A DNA stretch of 64,000 bases, taken from NCBI RefSeq assembly GCF_006345805.1, contig NC_043019.1, positions 22,753,360 through 22,817,359 on the forward strand, read 5' to 3'. Under the pieces are notes generated by a model that was not told the origin of the DNA, ran no database searches, and was given only the letters and a program-made list of their open reading frames with translations. Both the position numbers and the translations under genes were made by a program. This stretch comes from Octopus sinensis (Eukaryota). The first letter of the stretch is position 1. The number at the start of each line of letters is the position of its first letter. Positions 4,095-50,289 of the stretch are shown in pieces.

Positions 4095-4505
4095 TTATTG
4101 CCATTTAATGTCTACTTTCCCATGTTTGCAAGGGTCAGACTGAATTTGTTGAGGCAGATTTTCTACAGCCTGATGCCCTTCCTCTCACCAACTCTTACCT
4201 GTTTCCAAGCAAGGTAGTATTTGCCCATGGTAAGACAAGTTTTACATGGAAAAACTACAAGTCAACAACCTCACTTGAATGACAGTGCTCATTTACAACC
4301 ATTACATGTCAAAAGAAGGGTGCACAGACTCATGCACACACACGACAGGCTTCTTTCAGTTTCCATCTCCCAAATCCACTCACATGGCTTTAGTTAGCTC
4401 AAGGCTACAGCAGAAGATACTTGACCAAGATGCTGCATAGCAGGACTGAAGCTGAGACCTCATAGTTAGGAAGCAAGCAAGCTCTTTAACTATGCAACCA
4501 TGCCT
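4095..4505 (-). mobile_element. SINE with family-A head and RTE-type 3' tail
   Basis: Family-A-like head/core joined to a GGAAGGGCATC...AGACATTAAATG tail similar to the RTE 3' ends in this window. Confidence 0.7.
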
Positions 4506-15583: not shown

Positions 15584-16550
15584 CATATATATATATATAT
15601 ATATAAAATATTATTAGAGACAAAACCACTATTTTGCAAAACAAACAAGGAAAGACTTAATCAATACATAAAATTTTAATAAATAGTCAAATAAATAGTT
15701 TTGTCTCTAATAATATTTTATAATATTTTACTATAAAATTGGATTTAATCCTAAATCTGATTTTTTCCCTGTAAATTTGGATTTATTCCCTAATATTTAT
15801 TATTATATATATATATAAATATATAAATAGAACAAAAATGCAATAGAGGGCATTAAAACATTCGGACAGATGAACAAGACAAAGGCTGACAAGAGAAACA
15901 ACAATTAGAAGGACAGGCAAAAAAGACGAGTCATTCTTGGCTGTCTTTCTTCAGTCAAGTACCAAAAGTCACGACCATTTCGGACAGTTACACTTGAGAT
16001 GGTTCAAGCCTATGGTCTTTGATAGAAAGGAACGAGGAAAGAAAATGGAGAGAGAAGAAACACATCTGGATTAACAGTTCCATGTAACACACACACACAC
16101 CAAAGACAACAGGTTTCTTGCAGTTTCCGTTTACCAATTTCACTGACAAGGAATTGGTTGTCCTGAGTCTGTAGTAGAAGACTGTTGCCCAAAGTGCCAC
16201 GCAGTGGGACTGAACCCAAAACTTTATGGTTGGTAACTAAAGTTCTTAACCACACAACCATGCCTGCACTTACACACACACACACACACACACACTCTCC
16301 CCCACTCCCTCTCTGCTTTCTTGTATTTTAATGTGCTGTGTGTTATTTATTGCTGAAATGAACTCTTGAACTTCAACATGGAAACTATGTCATGGTCGTC
16401 AGACATAAACACATCAGCAGCTGACGAAGACAGGAACTGACAATCTTGCACCTGAGCGTCTGATACTGTCAAATGCAGCTCACTGCTGATGAATGCAGAG
16501 AAATAATTGTCACCCTGTTGTCATCACCTCTCATCACAGACAGTAATACT

Positions 16551-16972
16551 TATTTCTTTATTACCCACAAGGGGCTAAACACAGAGGGGACAAACAAGGA
16601 CAGACATAGGTATTAAGTTGATTACATCGACCCCAGTGCGTAACTGGTACTTAATTTATTGACCCCGAAAGGATGAAAGGCAAAGTCGACCTCGGCGGAA
16701 TTTTAACTCACAACGTAAAGACAGACCAAATACCTATTTCTTTACTACCCACAAGGGCCTAAACACAGAGGGGACAAACAAGGACAGACATAGGTATTAA
16801 GTCGATTACATCGACCCCAGTGAGTAACTGGTACTTAATTTATCGACCCCGAAAGGATGAAAGGCAAAGTCAACCTCGGCGGAATTTGAACTCAGAACGT
16901 AGCGATAGACGAAATACGGCTACGCATTTCGCCCGGCGTGCTAACGTTTCTGCCAGCCCACCGCCTTGTATT
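16551..16972 (-). mobile_element. Dimeric SINE family B inserted as one unit
   Basis: 15-bp TSD ACAGACAGTAATACT at 16536-16550 and 16973-16987; second unit lacks the tRNA 5' half. Confidence 0.85.
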
Positions 16973-17645: not shown

Positions 17646-19020
17646 TATTGCAGGTGCAATTGTGGTCATGTGATATGAAGCTTGCTTCTCGACTACATGG
17701 TTCCGGGTTCAGTCCCACAGCATGGCACCTTCGATAAGTGTCTTCTACTATAGCCTCAGGCTGACCAAAGCTTTGTGACTAGATTTGGTAGATGGAAACT
17801 GAAAGAAGCTCATCATATATGTATATATATTTATGTGTGTTTGTCCGTCCATCACTGCTTGACAACCGGTGTTGGTGTGTTTATGTCCCCATAACTTAGT
17901 AGTTCAGCAAAAGAGATTAATAGAATAAGTACCAGGCTTAAAAAATGTAAGTCCTGGGGGTGATTTGTTCAACTAAAACCCTTCAAGGCGGTGCTCCAGC
18001 ATGGCCACAGTCAAATGACTGAAACGAGTGAAAGAATATTTGATAGAGTAATCTGAATGCTACAGGGTTAAAATATTTAAACCCATCTGATTTGTCTGGA
18101 TTTTGGAAAGGAGTGTGTGTGTGTGTGGTGGGGGTGGGGTAGAACAGGACAACTTGTCTGCCCCTCACCACTTTTCCATCCTAACAGCTACCCCTTCCCA
18201 TGAGAGAGACAGACCAACAATCTCTGTCCATCCTTAGTTCACTGCATTTACCATTGTGAGAGGGTTAAGGGAAGAGTTGTACAACTCGGGTGTAACAAAT
18301 ATCAAGAAGGATTTTTGTTCTGAGGTGATGATAATGGCAATAGTGGTGGTAGCGGTGGTGATGGTGGTGGTGAAAGCAGTGGTAATGACAGTGATAACGA
18401 TGGTGATGATGTTGAATTGACAATTATTGCAAAACAAAAAAAGACAAAAAAAAAAAAAACAAATCCATATATGGAAGTCAATTTGTGGTAACATTTGTTT
18501 TTTGCATTTTTTTTTTTAATTCTTGTTTCATTGTTTTATCTCCACTGCCACAACCATCACCACCTTTTTTTTTTTTAGATATATATTTTACATAATGAAG
18601 CAAAGCCAATTATGTTTCAACCATCAAAATAACCAACCCAAAACAAAACAAAAACAAAGAAACTAAATTTAAATAAATTCCATTCTATTAGCCTCTTCTT
18701 ATGTTAAAAATCTGGTCGGTTATGCATAATTAATTTCACTAATTATTCATAAAAACTGTTTTCCTGGCCTTGCAATGATATGGCTCTTGTTTATCTACTT
18801 TCTCCTTATTACCATAAATCTATTTCTATTTAGATACGATACCAGTAAATCCAAGTCGGAGTTTATCTTATTTTGTTTTGTTAAAGTTGTTTAACTATTT
18901 TTTTTGTGGTGGCAGGGGAAAAAAGTTCTTGGATAGAAAAACAATAAATAATCTTTGAAAACTAGGAATTAAATGTTTATGGAGTGAAGTTTTATAGCAC
19001 TGTGTATGTATGTGTGTGGT

Positions 19021-19268
19021 GGGGGGTTACTGTTTGGGTTATAAAATAACACTAGACTGTGTGTGTGTGGGGGGGAGGTTTACTGTTTGGGTCATGAAAT
19101 AACACTAGACTGTGTGTGTGTGGGGGGGAGGTTTACTGTTTGGGTCATGAAATAACACTAGACTGTGTGTGTGTGTGGGGGGGAGGTTACTGTTTGGGTC
19201 ATGAAATAACACTAGACTGTGTGTGTGTGGGGGGGAGGTTTACTGTTTGGGTCATGAAATAACACTAG

Positions 19269-19300
<32 letters not shown>
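19021..19300. repeat. Minisatellite, five units of about 52 bp
   Basis: Unit GGGGGGAGGTTTACTGTTTGGGTCATGAAATAACACTAGACT(GT)n. Confidence 0.95.
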
Positions 19301-22628: not shown

Positions 22629-22796
22629 GTGTGTGTATATATACACACACACACACACATTGAGACAGCTGTACATACAAATACAGACAGACAAAGACAC
22701 AGTCACACATTCATGGACAATCATAAAAATATAGTTAAACAGTTGTACACAAAGACACGCAATCATGAAGAAGCACACACAGAGTGAAACATGTAC

Positions 22797-23190
22797 ACAC
22801 TCAGAGACAGCCATTCAGACATACACACACACACTCAGACACTTGTATGCATAGATGCACACACACACACACACAGTCATACATGTACACAGTAGTACAC
22901 ATCCGCACACATACATAATCATACATTTACACACTCAGAGACAGCCATACAGACACACACACACACACACACTTGTATGCGTAGACGGACACACACAAAG
23001 TCATACATGTACACAGTAGTACACATCCGCACACATACATAATCATACATTTACACACTCAGAGATAGCCATACAGACACACACACACTCAGACACTTCT
23101 ATGCATAGAAGGACACACACAAAGTCATACATGTACACAGTAGTACACATCCACACACATACGTAATCATACATACACACACACACAAAC
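22797..23190. repeat. Tandem repeat, three units of about 120-130 bp (CA-rich)
   Basis: Recurring CTCAGAGACAGCCAT...GTCATACATGTACACAGTAGTACACATCC. Confidence 0.9.
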
Positions 23191-23768
23191 AGTCGTACAT
23201 ACACACACACACACATGTGCACAGCTGGTGCAATGCAGATTGCTGATGATTATCTCAAAGTAATAAAATCATCTGTCATTGAGTCAATTAGATAACAACA
23301 ACAACAACAGCAAAATACGAAAATAATGACAAAAATATTAAGGCAACAACAAAAACATTAACTCTACAACAACAACAACAACAACAACAACGAGCATAAG
23401 ATATTAAAACAACATTAAAGCAAGCAACTTTATTATAGAAAAATCTCAATAAACAATTTTCAATTTGTCTGGAAAATGTTCCTAGTTGTGATGTTGCTGT
23501 CATGATAACTGCTGGTGTTGTTGTTGTTGTTATAACTAATTGAAATCGTTGTTGTGGTTGGTGTTGTAGTCCCTTATTTAACTAACTAACCCTAACCTTA
23601 ATTTCATCCAATTGGTCAAAAAAGGCATCAACATTACTGGGCTACTGTCTTGTGCCTAAAACTTGAAATCATAACTAGCTTCCTTCGGATATTGGGCTTC
23701 ACTGAAGAACACATTGCATTACAAGGAACTAAAGAAGGAATGACAGCACCACCCCAAAAGAGAAACAC

Positions 23769-27984: not shown

Positions 27985-28363
27985 GTCGCTTCAGATCGTT
28001 ACCAAAGTCGCTTCACTGGCACCTGTGCCGGTAGCACATGTAAAAAGATTCGAGTGAGGTCATTGCCAGTACCACCTAACCGGCCCCCGTGCTTCAGATC
28101 GTTACCAACGTCGCTCCACTGGCACCTGTGCCGGTGGCACGTGTAAAAAGATTCAAGTGAGGTCATTGCCAGTACCACCTGACTGGCATGTAAAAAGCAC
28201 CCACTACACTCTCGGAGTGGTTGGCGTTAGGAAGGGCATCCAGCTGTGGAAACTCTGCCAGATCAAGATTGGAGCCTGGTGCAGCCATCTGGCTCGCCAG
28301 CCCTCAGTCAAAATCGTCCGACCCATGCTAGCATGGAAAGCGGACGTTAAACGATGATGATGA
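27985..28363 (+). mobile_element. RTE 3' UTR fragment
   Basis: GTGCCGGTGGCAC repeats, GGAAGGGCATCCAG, (GAT)n tail. Confidence 0.85.
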
Positions 28364-36914: not shown

Positions 36915-37455
36915 TATACACATAGATACATGCATTTGTGTGCATGTATAAATGTATGTGCATCTCTGTCCCTCTCTTTCTCTCTCTCACAGATATAGGC
37001 ATATGCGTATGTATAAGAAATTAAGTAAATGGCAAAGGAGCAGGAAATTATGCAAAGAACTCCATTAACTAACAGCTGTTTCTGCGATAAGATGCCACTC
37101 AGAGCTGACTTCTTGTGCATTACCTGGTAGCTTTCCTGAAGCTTCCAAAACGAACAGCACTTTCATTTTGGAAGCTATAGGATGATGCACAAGCAGTCAG
37201 CTCTGCATGTGCTGCATCTTTAAGCAGAAACAGCTGGAAGCTAATGAAGTTCTCTGCATAATTTCCAGTCCGTTTGTTATTCCGAAGCATATGTGTATTG
37301 AGTTCTGACATTAGGTTAATAGTACCACAATGGCTAAACGAAACACTAATATGTGTATGTACATATATGTGTGTGTGTGTGTGTGTGCATGTTTAGTTAT
37401 ATACACATGTATACATATGTATGCATATATATGTGTATGTATATATATATATATA

Positions 37456-37823
37456 GGCATAGGAGTGGCTGTGTGGTAAGTAGCTTGCTTACAAACGACA
37501 TGGTTCCGGGTTCAGTCCCACTTGGGCAAGTGTCTTCTACTATTGCCTTGGGCCGACTAAAGCCTTGTGAGTGGATTTAGTAGATGGAAACTGAAGGAAG
37601 CCTGTCGTATATATGTATGTGTGTTTGTCCCCCCCCCCAGCATCGCTTGACAACCGATGCAGATGTGTTTACATCCCCGTAACTTAGCGCTTCAGCAAAA
37701 GAGACCGATAGAATAAGTACTAGGCTTACAAAGAATAAGTCCTGGGGTTGATTTGCTCAACTAAAGGCGGTGCTCCAGCATGGCTGCAGCCAAATGACTG
37801 AACAAGTAAAAGAGTAAAAGAGT
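37456..37823 (+). mobile_element. SINE family A
   Basis: Full-length with a small internal deletion. Confidence 0.85.
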
Positions 37824-37924: not shown

Positions 37925-38080
37925 TTATTTTAACATCCACTTCTTCATATTTGCATGGGTTAGATGGAGTTTGCTGAGGTGGATTTTCTATGGCCAGATA
38001 CCCTTCCTGTTGCCAAATTCACCTGTTCCCAAGTAAAGTAATATTTCCCCCATGACCAAACCTGATTGGAAATGAAGAAC
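37925..38080 (-). mobile_element. 3' part of RTE-tailed SINE, truncated at 38080
   Basis: Homologous to 4095-4300 and 29680-29880; homology stops abruptly after GGAAATGAAGAAC. Confidence 0.75.
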
Positions 38081-38380
38081 CTAGAGCGTGACTATCCAGC
38101 CGGGGCCGACCCGTAAGCTTATGGGTCGGACCACGTCGCTCTATCTACCCGGTTCGTATCGCCACACACTTCCCTAGACTGACGGCATCGATCGCGCCTA
38201 CGTCCACGTGTACGTGAGCCATACCGCGAGCTTAGGTTCGTTCTTTTGATTTCGGGCACGGTAACGTGGCGGAGCTGCGGGCAAAGGTGGGAGCAGGCAG
38301 CCCCTAGTCACACTGGCCATAGTTTGTCATCTTTCGGGAATTTACGGGACGGACCACGTCGCCGTATCGAGCGCGTGCAT
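38081..38380. other. Unexplained GC/CpG-rich block of about 300 bp, unlike the host sequence
   Basis: 177/300 G+C and about 34 CpG by manual count; no microsatellite; no homology elsewhere in the window; no long ORF; abrupt junctions with SINE fragments on both sides. Confidence 0.9.
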
Positions 38381-38535
38381 CAAATTCCGCCGAGGTCGAC
38401 TTTGCCTTTCATCCTTTCAGGGTCGTTTAAATAGGTACCAGTTACGCACTGGGGTCAATATAATCAACTTAATCTGTTTGTCTGTCTTTGTTTGTCCCCT
38501 CTGTGTGTAGCCCCTTGCAAGCAGTAAAGAAATAA
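38381..38535 (+). mobile_element. SINE family B lacking its head
   Basis: Starts mid B-box (CAAATTCCGCCGAGGTCGAC) and runs to the AAAGAAATAAG tail. Confidence 0.85.
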
Positions 38536-39467
38536 GAAATAGTAAAATTTGGTATGTTTGTATATCTACTTCGTAGGTTAACACATATATATGAGTGTGT
38601 GTGTTAACACATATATATGAGTGTGTGTGTGTGTATGTTTTAGGTGTAGTTCTTATATAGTTAAGAATAGTAAAAATGTATTAATCAGCCTCAGATGAAA
38701 GTTTTCTTGCTTCCACCAGCCATTATTGCCACCGCCCTGAATCTTATTTTATTGGATGTGACAAGTGTAGTAATGTTGTATAGCTTAATATCGTAAGTAA
38801 AAGTACATTGTGAAGATCTGTAATTTCAAAGTAATACAGGAACTGGTGTCAATCTTGGAGCTGTGAATCCCACAATTGTTAGTGAAGGTGTATAGGCAAA
38901 GGTACACTTTGTATTAAGAAATTCTTGAACAGCAGATATTAGCAAGAGAGAGGGAGAGGATGGAGAGAGAGAGAGAGAGAGACGGGGGTCAGAGAAACTG
39001 AAAGAAGAATATATCCTCAAGGATGTTTTGTGTTACCTAATATATTTCATTTTTGTGAAGAATAGCATCTTTAGGCATCAGATTCTAAAGGACCACACCC
39101 TACTTAGTAGCATTTATAAATGAGTGTTACAACAGATTGTTTGTGTACTTCTGACAGGACAGGTACTGTAACCATCTTGATACTAATTCACCTGAACTTC
39201 CTGCTTCTATGATTATAAACATCCAGTTTCTAAAGTGATCTAAATTAAAACAGTCCATCAACATTTCACGTTAATTTGTTCCAAACGCCAGATTGATAAC
39301 GTTTTCCTTGCTAACCACTCAGGGAACCACCAAATCAATAATGTTAGAAGACTAAATTCTTCATTACTTCCATAATTAACTGAAACAAAAGCAGTGTATT
39401 TCAACAGAATTATGGCAATAAAAGGAATCAGGAGTATTTCTCTGCAGGTGTTTTGACAATCAAGGTT

Positions 39468-39840
39468 CATCAACATTTTAATGTCCACTTTTCCATGACT
39501 GCATGGGTCAAGCACAATTTGTTCAGGCACATTTTCTACAGCAAGATGTCCATCCTGTGACCAAGCCTCACCTGTTTCCAAGTAAGGTAATATTTCTCCT
39601 TACCTGGACACGTTTTCACAAGACACTGGATTCAAATGACACTGATTCTCACAACTAATACATGATGGAAAGGCAAGGAAACACATATGTGCATATATTC
39701 ACATATAAAGAACAGGCTTCTTTCAGTTTCCATCAACCAAATCCACTCACAAGGCTTTGCTCAGCCTGAGGCCATAAAACAAGACACTTGCCCAAGGTAC
39801 CACTCAGTGGGACTGAACCCTAAACCATGTGGTTGGGAAC
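39468..39840 (-). mobile_element. SINE with family-A head and RTE-type tail
   Basis: Same architecture as 4095-4505. Confidence 0.7.
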
Positions 39841-40809
39841 CAAACAGCCTGTTTCTTAAAAGAAAGAAGCTAAAACATGACAATGATACTTGTAAGCAGA
39901 AACCATCAATACATACAATTAACAAGTATTTCAGTGCATACTTGTGTTACACATAATACAGAGAGTGGACAAAAAAAAAATTAACTTTGATTATCCATGT
40001 AATTAGTAAACAAAAACTCCCTCAAAGTGTTTAAAATTCTAGAGAAAGAGGGAGAGAATTCCAATGATACAAGCTAACTGAAAATTTTGGGGAAAAATAT
40101 GGTAATGCAGAGAGGAATGAATCTTGTCTAATTTTTGTAGTTTACAGGTGTGTGTGTGTGTGTGTGTGCATGCATGTGTGTAGTGAAGGATATACAAAAT
40201 TTAATAGAAGAGCCACACAAATAGATAAACTCGTTTCATAAGCCGTGCTTTTATCTGAAGTCAGTATGATTTTAGTGCTGGAAAATATGGATTGCTCATC
40301 TACAAAGCACCAAGGTTAAAAAATTTGTGTGTGTGTGTGTAAGAAAAAAACTGAACAATACAAAGTCAAGTTTTACAACTTAAAACAGAGAAGAGAGACA
40401 TATAGATGGGTCATATAAAAAACAAAATACAGAGTATCAACAAGAAAGAAATCTTTAGATTGAAGAAACAAACACAGCAAATAGTAGCAGAGAGGAAAAC
40501 TAGGAATAAACTTCTGCCAAAATTTATCTTGATATGAAATATATTGAACAGTGAGAGGATCAGGAGGATCAATAAATGAGAGAAAGGTGTGGTGGAAATC
40601 AACAGGATCAGGATGTATGAAAGAGGATGAAAGGGAGAGAGAGAGGGAGTAGGAAAAGAGTGAGATGATAGGGTATTTTTTTTTAACAAGGTACTGCCTT
40701 GTCAGTAGGTCTCCACTGATTACTTTGTCATATCTGTTTGGGTCCTCATAATGGTAACAAGGTAAGAACAAACACCCAAGGTGCGTTTTGTTCAATGTTA
40801 ACAATTCTA

Positions 40810-41180
40810 GGCGTAGAAGAGACTGTGTGGTAAGTAGCTTGCTTACCAACCACATGGTTCAGTCCCACTACGTGGCACCTTGGGCAAGTGTCTTCTACTA
40901 TAGCCTTAGGCCGACCAAAGCCTTGTGAGTGGATTTGGTTGACAGAAACTGAAAGAAGCCCGTCGTATATATGTATATATATGTGTGTGTGGTTATCCTC
41001 CCAACATCACTTGACAACCAATGCTGGTGTGTTTATGTCCCTGTAACTTAGTGGTTCGGCAAAAGAGACCGATAGAATAAGTACTAGGCTTACAAAGAAT
41101 AAGTCCTGGGTCGATTTGCTCGACTAAAGGTGGTGCTCCAGCATGGCCACAGTCAAATGACCGAAACAAGTAAAAGAGTA
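40810..41180 (+). mobile_element. SINE family A
   Basis: Near full-length. Confidence 0.85.
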
Positions 41181-49180: not shown

Positions 49181-49910
49181 TAGTTAACTAGATTAGCCAT
49201 TTGACTTATTGACTAATGGATTAATCATTTCATCAGTCAATCAATCAACTAGGTTTGTTTGAGTCCTTTCATCACCATTCACAGGTTAACTACTTTAATA
49301 ATAATAAAAGAAGTGAAATAGAACCAGTGTGTGTGTGTGTGTTATCATTGGCATAATGACCCTCCCAAAATCCAACAAAATTTTTTCCAACACACGAGTT
49401 CACATCAAGAATTTTTCAAAGCAAATGCGAAAACAAAATTATGAAAGTTTGACATGATAAATAAATATATAAAATGCTAATATCTTTTTTGTCCCCAGCT
49501 CCCTTCAAAAGAGCTTTTAAAAGCTAGTTGGTTCTTAGCTCTGGCTTCATGGCATTAAGTTAACAAGATATAAAAAAAACAAAATCTTCCCAAGGAAATG
49601 TTGCATGTCTATCATAGGCAACATTTCCACTTGATCTGCTGCATATCTCAAATTTGCTCAGTGAACCAATGAGAAGAGAATTACACACTTTAGTCAAATA
49701 CATGATGAACAGCATTCAATGAAATAGCTTCAGTGGAAGTCATTCAGTCAACCTGCTACAAGTACACATGCATCTCAAGAGTAAATAGACACTTCTCTTT
49801 ATACCATTTTATATATGCAACACGCAACTACATAGTGTTTCAAGCCTGTGTTATTTTTTTTATTATTTTAGATTATAGTATGTTAATTGTTAACAGTAAC
49901 TGACCATACC

Positions 49911-50289
49911 TATTTCTTTATTACCTATAAGGTGCTAAACATAGAGGGGACAAACAAGGTCAGACATAGGTATTAAGTCGATTACATTGACCCCAGTACG
50001 TAACTGGTACTTAATTTATCGACCCCGAAAGGATGAAAGGCAAAGTTGACCTCGGCGGAATTTGAACTCAGAACGTAACGGCAGACAAAATACCTGTTTC
50101 TTTATTACCCACAAGGGGCTAAACATAGAGGGGACAAACAAGGACAGACATAGGTATTAAGTCAATTACATTGATCCCAGAACGTAACTGGCACTTAATT
50201 TATCGACCCCGAAAGGATGAAAGGCAAAGTCGACCTCGGCGGAATTTGAACTCGCCTGGCGTGCTAACGTTTCTGCCAGCTCGCCGCCT
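49911..50289 (-). mobile_element. Dimeric SINE family B inserted as one unit
   Basis: 14-bp TSD TAACTGACCATACC at 49897-49910 and 50290-50303; same junction as 16551-16972. Confidence 0.85.

What the first reader, a model, noticed from the sequence alone, without database searches (positions are those of the whole stretch)
38081..38380. Sharply bounded 300-bp GC/CpG-rich block that replaces the ends of two different SINEs
Seen: about 59% GC and about 34 CpG in 300 bp (CpG above random expectation), in an AT-rich, CpG-depleted window. It has no microsatellite and no similarity to any repeat here. On the left an RTE-tailed SINE stops dead after GGAAATGAAGAAC; on the right a family-B SINE starts mid B-box (TCAAATTCCGCC) with its head missing. 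No TSD, poly-A, TIR or long ORF. Because two unrelated elements are each truncated, this looks like a replacement rather than a simple insertion. Inference: a very recent foreign or unmethylated sequence (unknown structured RNA, horizontally acquired or repair-captured DNA), or else contamination, misassembly or an artificial insert. The round length is compatible with the last.
Basis: partly seen in the sequence, partly recalled or inferred. Interest (0 to 1): 0.88.

Follow-up and report, generated by a model that had tools for sequence, protein, structure and literature searches.

The report
Stray piece of octopus tandem repeat
The GC- and CpG-rich 300-bp block is real, but it is a stray 1.35-unit fragment of a CpG-rich tandem-repeat family native to Octopus, wedged between two truncated SINEs; it is not foreign DNA, a new RNA gene or an artificial insert.

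Summary
Bases 38081-38380 are 59% GC with 34 CpG (observed/expected 1.30), against 37.5% GC and 0.41 for the window, and this is the top 300-bp stretch on both measures.

The foreign, artificial and structured-RNA readings fail. Translated pieces of the block hit one protein, an Octopus sinensis gene model called over a 231-bp tandem DNA repeat. Its contig carries about 6 kb of CpG-rich tandem arrays (CpG o/e 1.3-2.1). The block matches them at 77-97% from 38079 to 38381, which confirms both borders independently.

The block is a 40-nt partial unit, one full 223-nt unit and the first 40 nt of the next. The 27-nt direct repeat 223 nt apart marks the unit register.

- **RNA:** no Rfam match, folding no better than shuffles, no covariation.
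- **Coding:** stops in all six frames.
- **Origin elsewhere:** no match in phage, plasmid, viral, metagenome or prokaryote collections.
- **Age:** CpG richness is inherited from the family. The block keeps 57% of family consensus CpGs, the same as the neighbouring SINE, so it need not be young.

Both flanking SINEs lack their 5' ends and face the block. No target-site duplication exists. Both block ends fall inside family units, which suggests a random fragment, most likely captured during break repair with flanking deletion. The mechanism is inferred. Interest is low.

The parts
38079..38381 (+). Whole block as bounded by homology to the Octopus sinensis tandem-repeat arrays: about 303 nt, 59% GC, CpG o/e 1.3.
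   Evidence: BLASTN against L002. The outermost matches start at 38079 and end at 38381.
38079..38118 (+). Partial unit of a variant type (ACCTAGAGCGTGACTATCCAGCCGGGGCCGACCCGTAAGC). It carries the left arm of the palindrome.
   Evidence: 97% identity to L002 6508-6473 and 90% to L002 6322-6271. In L002 both copies are preceded by GTGCGACGGTC, so the window's left end lies inside a unit.
38103..38132 (.). Imperfect palindrome (13 of 15 paired) centred on AAGCTT. It is the strongest local hairpin.
   Evidence: exceeds all 300 shuffles. The same palindrome is conserved at L002 6271-6301.
38119..38341 (+). One complete 223-nt repeat unit.
   Evidence: It aligns over its length with the 221-231-nt units of L002 (alignment A1). 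It has 22 CpG, o/e 1.22.
38342..38381 (+). First 40 nt or so of the next unit, cut off by the SINE.
   Evidence: The 27-nt direct repeat 38119-38145 / 38342-38368 (85%) marks the unit register. The family continues ...GTGTATC-TCGTGAC where the window switches to SINE sequence.
38380..38381 (+). Right junction. The dinucleotide TC is shared by the repeat unit and the SINE-B consensus (2-nt microhomology).
   Evidence: Three-way comparison.
37927..38078 (-). Left neighbour: 3' body of a minus-strand SINE lacking roughly 250 nt of its 5' part. Two related copies in the window continue rightwards into an inverted tRNA-like head.
   Evidence: Relatives lie at 4104-4450 and 39477-39796.
38380..38540 (+). 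Right neighbour: family-B SINE, plus strand, lacking the first 78 nt or so (starts inside the B-box-like GTTCAAATTCC). It is 88% identical to the consensus.

Best explanation
The block is a non-functional fragment of about 303 bp from a CpG-rich tandem-repeat family native to Octopus. It consists of a 40-nt partial unit, one 223-nt unit and the first 40 nt of the next unit. A roughly 6-kb complex of arrays of this family sits on O. sinensis contig VCDQ01003899.1.

Its GC and CpG richness is the family's own composition. It is not a sign of foreign origin or of extreme youth.

It most likely reached this site as a random piece of such an array. The source could be a genomic fragment, an extrachromosomal circle or a cDNA. 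The piece was ligated into a double-strand break lying between or within two SINEs that faced each other head to head. Resection or deletion at the break removed the inner (5') parts of both SINEs. Joining was by end-joining with little or no microhomology, so no target-site duplication was made.

Shown: identity with the family, unit structure, borders, absence of a target-site duplication, absence of RNA or coding signal.

Inferred: the capture-with-deletion mechanism and the order of events.
For: **Identity with the family.**
- Six-frame pieces of the block hit only P0001, an O. sinensis gene model with a 77-aa (231-nt) period.
- Its locus L002 holds tandem arrays of 139, 118/234, 223 and 231 bp over about 6 kb. 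Their GC is 43-60% and CpG o/e 1.3-2.1.
- The block matches these arrays at 77-97%, colinearly and only between 38079 and 38381.
- The block has an internal 223-nt register.

**Random fragment.** Both ends fall inside family units.

**Repair-type junctions.**
- No target-site duplication of 6 nt or more in any of four insertion scenarios.
- A 2-nt microhomology at the right junction.
- Both neighbours are truncated on the inner side.

**Not RNA or coding.**

**Not foreign.**
Against: - The exact donor array was not found. Only one other locus of the family could be fetched, so copy number and the variety of unit types are unknown.
- Both truncations remove 5' ends. Ordinary 5'-truncated retroposition produces the same picture without any deletion.
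- A 2-nt microhomology is weak evidence, and the left junction is ambiguous.
- The pre-insertion state of the locus cannot be seen with these tools.
- The block shows modest CpG decay (6 of 30 consensus CpGs are now TG or CA). It may therefore be as old as the SINEs, which leaves the order of events open.
Confidence: 0.5

Rival explanations
1. The block is older resident DNA, a small orphan remnant of an array. Two SINEs retroposed independently on either side of it, and each was 5'-truncated at insertion.
For: - Both SINEs are missing precisely their 5' parts and point their 3' tails outward.
- The window is saturated with SINEs, so any short unique segment will be flanked by them.
- The block's CpG retention (57%) equals that of the SINE-B copy, so it need not be younger.
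Against: - Neither SINE has a target-site duplication that copies the very distinctive CpG-rich ends of the block.
- No further array sequence lies beyond either SINE or anywhere else in the 64 kb.
- Two independent 5' truncations are required.
Confidence: 0.25
2. The block and the SINE are one chimeric retro-insertion. The LINE reverse transcriptase copying SINE-B RNA switched template, 78 nt before the 5' end, onto a transcript of the tandem repeat. Block plus SINE-B then arrived together.
For: - A 5'-truncated SINE is fused in the same left-to-right order to an unrelated sequence, with a 2-nt overlap (TC) at the switch point.
- This layout resembles known chimeric retrogenes such as the U6-L1 type. 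That comparison is from my own knowledge, not a test.
Against: - No target-site duplication flanks block plus SINE-B.
- The block would have to land exactly at the truncated end of the other SINE. The missing part of the left SINE is not found beyond the SINE-B tail.
- Nothing shows that the repeat is transcribed on this strand.
- The block's 5' end lies inside a unit, not at a defined RNA start.
Confidence: 0.12
3. A short array carried by a non-autonomous mobile element, as satellite monomers are spread by Helentron- or MITE-like elements in bivalves.
For: - The array is short (1.35 units) and isolated from large arrays.
- A GC-rich palindrome lies about 18 nt from a CTAG at the left edge.
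- The mollusc precedent is from my own knowledge.
Against: - No terminal inverted repeats and no target-site duplication.
- In L002 the sequence continues identically past the CTAG in both copies, so it is not a terminus.
- The right end also lies inside a unit.
- No conserved non-repeat flanks are present.
Confidence: 0.05
4. Artificial insert, contamination, misassembly or horizontally acquired DNA.
For: - The length is close to a round number.
- Dinucleotide frequencies are statistically compatible with random sequence. My hand calculation from the counts gives chi-square of about 14 on 9 d.f.
- The block is unique within the window.
Against: - It is homologous, with substitutions and indels, to native O. 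sinensis arrays.
- The true length is about 303 nt.
- The internal repeat and palindrome exceed all shuffles.
- No match in plasmid, phage, viral, metagenome or prokaryote collections.
Confidence: 0.03
5. A functional element: a structured non-coding RNA gene, or a protected unmethylated CpG-island-like regulatory element.
For: - It formally meets the numerical CpG-island criteria (GC 59%, o/e 1.3, 300 bp).
- It contains one strong local hairpin.
Against: - No Rfam match at E<=10.
- MFE z-scores are +0.41 and -0.11.
- The alifold covariation term is unfavourable.
- No gene or ORF lies nearby.
- The composition is explained by the repeat family.
- In O. bimaculoides most intergenic and TE CpGs are unmethylated anyway (PMC9476566).
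Confidence: 0.03

Closest known systems
Tandem arrays on Octopus sinensis contig VCDQ01003899.1 (GCA_006345805.1). NCBI annotates part of them as the gene model 'serine/arginine repetitive matrix protein 1-like' (P0001).
   Same: - Sequence homology of 77-97% across the whole block.
- The same unit anchor, TTACGGGNCGGACCACGTC.
- A similar unit length (223 against 221-231 nt).
- The same palindrome module.
- The same high GC and CpG content.
   Different: - The window holds only 1.35 units, isolated, with both ends broken inside units.
- Its unit carries a 10-nt insertion and a roughly 19-nt deletion relative to the 231-bp units.
- It is closed by stops in all frames.
- The L002 arrays are open in several frames on both strands, because 231 is a multiple of 3. 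That is why a gene model was called there.
Filler DNA or templated insertions captured at double-strand-break repair junctions (non-homologous or microhomology-mediated end joining).
   Same: - A fragment with arbitrary end points taken from elsewhere in the genome.
- No target-site duplication.
- Apparent loss of flanking sequence on both sides.
- 0-5 nt of junction microhomology.
   Different: The donor locus and the pre-insertion allele were not seen. The event is inferred, not demonstrated.
Multi-type CpG-rich subrepeat blocks such as rDNA intergenic-spacer subrepeats or LINE-1 promoter monomers. This is an analogy from my own knowledge.
   Same: Several adjacent arrays of different 100-240-bp units, CpG-rich, spanning a few kb.
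   Different: No rRNA or any Rfam family lies within 21 kb. No LINE ORF adjoins the arrays. Membership is not supported.
Chimeric retrogenes formed by reverse-transcriptase template switching (U6-L1 type).
   Same: A 5'-truncated retroposon fused at its 5' end to an unrelated sequence, with a short overlap.
   Different: No flanking target-site duplication, and the 5' partner is not a defined small RNA.

Membership tests
Octopus CpG-rich tandem-repeat family (arrays in L002) | Sequence homology to the array units over the whole element | tested here: met
   77-97% identity in colinear pieces covering 38079-38381. Unit alignment A1.
Octopus CpG-rich tandem-repeat family (arrays in L002) | Head-to-tail periodicity within the element itself | tested here: met
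   The unit anchor recurs at 38119 and 38342, 223 nt apart. The direct repeat beats all 300 shuffles. Only 1.35 units are present.
Octopus CpG-rich tandem-repeat family (arrays in L002) | Family composition (GC about 43-60%, CpG o/e above 1.2) | tested here: met
   Block CpG o/e is 1.30. L002 arrays are 1.27-2.12.
Satellite DNA in the strict sense (abundant long arrays) | High genomic copy number and long homogeneous arrays | not testable with these tools
   No Octopus genome is searchable by DNA here. Only one further locus was reachable, through a protein.
Known structured RNA family (Rfam 15) | Covariance-model match | tested here: not met
   No match inside the block at E<=10. None in the L002 arrays at E<=1.
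Novel structured RNA | Folding energy better than shuffles; compensatory changes among relatives | tested here: not met
   z-scores +0.41 and -0.11. Alifold gives -12.8 kcal/mol with a covariation term of +1.81. The test is underpowered, with only 8 units.
Retroposon (SINE, LINE or processed copy) | 3' tail or poly-A and a flanking target-site duplication | tested here: not met
   No target-site duplication of 6 nt or more. No A-rich tail in the block.
DNA transposon or Helitron-like carrier | Terminal inverted repeats, or a 3' hairpin plus CTRR at a true terminus | tested here: not met
   No terminal inverted repeats. A hairpin and a CTAG exist, but homology in L002 runs on past the CTAG in both copies.
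Foreign DNA or contamination | Match to non-host sequence and no match to the host | tested here: not met
   No real match in plasmids, phages, viral, metagenome or prokaryote collections. A host relative was found.
Break-repair filler insertion | No target-site duplication; arbitrary fragment ends; loss of flanking sequence | tested here: met
   The loss of flanking sequence is inferred from the truncated SINEs.
Break-repair filler insertion | Junction microhomology | tested here: inconclusive
   2 nt (TC) at the right junction. The left junction is ambiguous because the SINE copies are only about 77% alike.
Break-repair filler insertion | Identifiable donor and an empty allele | not testable with these tools
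   This needs the species' own genome and related assemblies.
Protein-coding exon (P0001-like) | Open reading frame matching the protein | tested here: not met
   Matches of 13-15 aa are scattered over three minus-strand frames, and all six frames have stops. No Pfam hit.
CpG island | Length >=200 bp, GC >=50%, CpG o/e >=0.6 | tested here: met
   300 bp, 59% GC, o/e 1.30. This is numerical only. Promoter function and methylation state cannot be tested here.

The most novel reading that the evidence does not exclude
The family behind the block may be an undescribed, actively dispersing CpG-rich repeat of octopods. For example, transcripts or extrachromosomal circles of the arrays might be repeatedly captured at breaks or by SINE/LINE reverse transcriptase. 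Isolated fragments like this one would then be common markers of a repair or template-switching pathway in a SINE-saturated genome.
Probability: 0.1. Interest if true: 0.4.

Novelty: new member of a known kind. Interest (0 to 1): 0.14.

Why it matters
Mostly as a clean negative. A striking compositional outlier that looked like foreign or artificial DNA turns out to be a native repeat fragment.

It has three minor positive values:
- It points to a CpG-rich, multi-type tandem-repeat complex in Octopus. I found no paper that describes satellite or tandem-repeat DNA in Octopus.
- It shows that an NCBI gene model ('serine/arginine repetitive matrix protein 1-like') is probably an ORF called over tandem DNA.
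- It offers one candidate example of filler-DNA capture between SINEs, which an orthologous empty site could date.

Tried and rejected
- **Fetching the public copy of this locus.** I looked up nearby window ORFs (40373-40855 and 39258-39581, minus strand). Neither is on record.
- **DNA similarity to plasmids and phages.** The only result was a 22-nt chance match in a Microvirga plasmid at E=0.9.
- **Exact-pattern scans.**
  - The repeat consensus in viral contigs gave 0 hits.
  - The 20-nt palindrome gave one hit in a Caulobacteraceae MAG and none in metagenomes. The flanks of that hit are unrelated to the block, and about 2 hits are expected by chance by my own estimate, so I dismissed it.
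  - A 28-mer conserved in the family gave 0 hits in metagenome and viral contigs.
- **Concatenated ORFs of the L002 array as a protein query.** P0001 alone recovered only itself.
- **Pfam on block translations.** Nothing.
- **tRNA scan and Rfam scans of the L002 arrays.** Nothing.
- **In-place overwrite of exactly 300 bp.** The missing SINE parts add up to roughly 250 + 78 nt. They would overlap inside 300 bp, and the true block length is about 303 nt.
- **Helitron end (hairpin plus CTAG).** Rejected because the L002 copies read through the CTAG.
- **Target-site duplications.** None found for four different insertion scenarios.

Full report
**1.
Bases 38081-38380 are 59.0% GC and contain 34 CpG, with CpG observed/expected 1.30 and GpC 0.96. 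The whole window is 37.5% GC with CpG o/e 0.41. Among 300-bp windows stepped by 10 nt, this region ranks first for both GC and CpG. It peaks at 36 CpG, against a mean of 4.3 (sd 4.1) and a next best non-overlapping value of 20. CpGs begin at 38087 after a 167-nt gap, so the left edge is sharp. The block has no second copy in the 64 kb.

**2. The neighbours.**
The right neighbour is a family-B SINE with more than ten copies in the window. Aligned with nine other copies, it starts at 38380/38381, inside the B-box-like GTTCAAATTCC, and lacks about 78 nt of its head. It is 88% identical to the consensus and keeps 4 of 7 consensus CpGs.

The left neighbour (about 37927-38078) is only 77-81% similar to three other copies. 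In two of them (4104-4450 and 39477-39796) the sequence continues rightwards for 200-270 nt into an inverted tRNA-like SINE head. The left element is therefore on the minus strand, and it too lacks its 5' part. The two SINEs thus face each other with their missing 5' ends inward and their tails outward.

**3.
- *Structured RNA.* No Rfam 15 match lies inside the block even at E<=10. Minimum free energy is no better than dinucleotide shuffles on either strand (z = +0.41 and -0.11).
- *Coding.* All six frames contain stops and the pieces have no Pfam match.
- *Foreign DNA.* Nothing real appears in plasmids or phages or in the exact-pattern scans of viral, metagenome and prokaryote collections. 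The single 20-nt palindrome hit, in a Caulobacteraceae MAG, has unrelated flanks and is at chance expectation.
- *Random or synthetic sequence.* Dinucleotide counts alone are compatible with random sequence. My hand calculation from the counts gives chi-square of about 14 on 9 d.f. However, the block holds a 27-nt direct repeat (38119-38145 and 38342-38368, 85%, 223 nt apart) and a palindrome (38103-38132). Both exceed all 300 shuffles.

**4. What it is.**
I joined the stop-free pieces of all six frames into one protein query. It hit a single protein among 5.8 billion: P0001, 'serine/arginine repetitive matrix protein 1-like [Octopus sinensis]'. P0001 is a perfect 77-aa (231-nt) tandem repeat. 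The block's matches to it are scattered over three minus-strand frames. That pattern indicates DNA-level homology with frameshifts, not a shared protein.

The encoding contig is VCDQ01003899.1 of GCA_006345805.1, fetched as locus L002. It carries about 6 kb of adjacent tandem arrays:
- 139 bp x 2.4 copies;
- 118/234 bp x 20 copies;
- 223 bp x 2.4 copies;
- 231 bp x 5.7 copies, plus diverged units beyond.

These arrays have 43-60% GC and CpG o/e of 1.27-2.12. They are embedded in ordinary AT-rich, SINE-rich DNA.

The block matches these arrays in reverse orientation:
- 87-89% over 38183-38282 to five 231-bp units;
- 77% (gapped) over 38183-38381 to a diverged unit;
- 90-97% over 38079-38130 to two copies of a variant module that contains the same palindrome.

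The outermost matches begin at 38079 and end at 38381.

The unit anchor TTACGGGNCGGACCACGTC occurs at 38119 and 38342 in the window and eight times in L002. The block therefore breaks down as follows:
- a 40-nt partial variant unit;
- one complete 223-nt unit, which aligns end to end with the L002 units;
- the first 40 nt or so of the next unit.

The window elements are SINE families that also occur in L002, consistent with an Octopus origin of the window.

**5. The family gives no sign of function.**
No Rfam family appears in L002 at gathering score, or in the arrays at E<=1. There are no tRNAs. The 8-unit alignment yields a consensus structure of -12.8 kcal/mol with an unfavourable covariation term, though that test has little power.

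No transposon ORF adjoins the arrays. The long ORFs across the 231-bp array are open on both strands and in several frames. This is expected for a stop-free unit whose length is a multiple of three, so the gene model is probably an annotation artefact. No further relatives of P0001 exist in the protein collection.

**6. CpG richness does not show youth.**
The family consensus is extremely CpG-rich, with 27-30 CpG per 231-bp unit. The window unit keeps 17 of 30 consensus CpGs. Six others are now TG or CA. That is 57% retention, the same as the adjacent SINE-B copy.

[quoted passage not shown] Methylation there is concentrated in gene bodies and nearly absent from transposons (PMC9476566). The block stands out because of what it was made from. 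It does not have to be new or specially protected.

**7. How it got there (inferred).**
- Both block ends fall inside family units. In L002 both copies of the left module are preceded by GTGCGACGGTC, and the units continue TCGTGAC after GTGTATC. The block is therefore an arbitrary fragment, not an element with its own termini.
- No target-site duplication of 6 nt or more exists in any of four cases: SINE-B alone, the left SINE alone, block plus SINE-B, or the whole composite. The CpG-rich ends of the block are distinctive enough that a duplicated copy would be easy to see.
- The right junction has a 2-nt overlap (TC). The left junction is ambiguous.

The most economical reading is capture of a repeat fragment during repair of a double-strand break, with loss of the inner parts of two head-to-head SINEs. 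I put this at about 0.5.

The main rival, at about 0.25, is that the block is older DNA and the two SINEs were independently 5'-truncated on insertion. That fits their orientation but not the missing target-site duplications. A reverse-transcriptase template switch from SINE-B RNA onto a repeat transcript (about 0.12) fits the right junction only. A Helentron- or MITE-type carrier (about 0.05), an artefact or foreign origin (about 0.03) and a functional RNA or CpG island (about 0.03) have little support.

**8. Comparison with known things, and verdict.**
The block is a member of the tandem-repeat family seen on the O. sinensis contig. Homology, periodicity and composition were all tested and met.

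Whether that family is a satellite in the strict sense, and whether it is linked to rDNA or centromeres, cannot be tested here. Literature searches returned no paper on satellite or tandem-repeat DNA in Octopus.

The placement works like filler DNA at an end-joining junction, but neither the donor nor the empty allele was seen.

Overall this is an ordinary feature: a correct and well-bounded observation with a mundane explanation. Its novelty is that of a new member of a known kind, and interest is low.

Noticed in passing
L002 9962-11083 (O. sinensis VCDQ01003899.1): The NCBI gene model 'serine/arginine repetitive matrix protein 1-like' (P0001, 353 aa) lies entirely on a 231-bp tandem DNA array. 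The array is open in several frames on both strands (ORFs of 366, 364 and 319 aa), so the model is probably an annotation artefact. Its Pfam hit to YuA_Gp49 (38 bits) has no single stretch that passes on its own, and looks like summed weak repeat matches.
   Followed up: partly
L002 6776-9106: Twenty copies of a 118-bp unit, CpG o/e about 1.9-2.1. Each unit has a B-box-like GAGTTCGATATC, a GC hairpin (GGGCCTCGCGGCCC) and a T13-15 run, which looks like a Pol III gene or terminator layout. No tRNA or Rfam match was found.
   Followed up: partly
window 16545-16917 and 49906-50253; L002 3026-3475 and 3992-4876: The 3' two-thirds of the family-B SINE forms head-to-tail arrays of period 184 bp (2-5 copies) at several loci, in the window and in O. 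sinensis. This SINE therefore also propagates as short tandem arrays.
   Followed up: no
L002 5520-5730 (read on the minus strand): At the edge of the CpG-rich region of L002 sits a family-A SINE copy that also seems to lack its 5' head. This echoes the situation in the window. It may be coincidence, or it may hint that the array edges are break or insertion hotspots.
   Followed up: no
window 37348-37480: TG/TA microsatellite-like sequence gives sub-threshold Rfam matches to mir-297, mir-466 and mir-3149 (best 43.8 bits against a gathering score of 90). These are low-complexity artefacts.
   Followed up: no
window 19007-19284, 22789-23215, 27988-28187: Other short tandem arrays (periods 53/107, 124 and 103 bp), unrelated to the block.
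   Followed up: no
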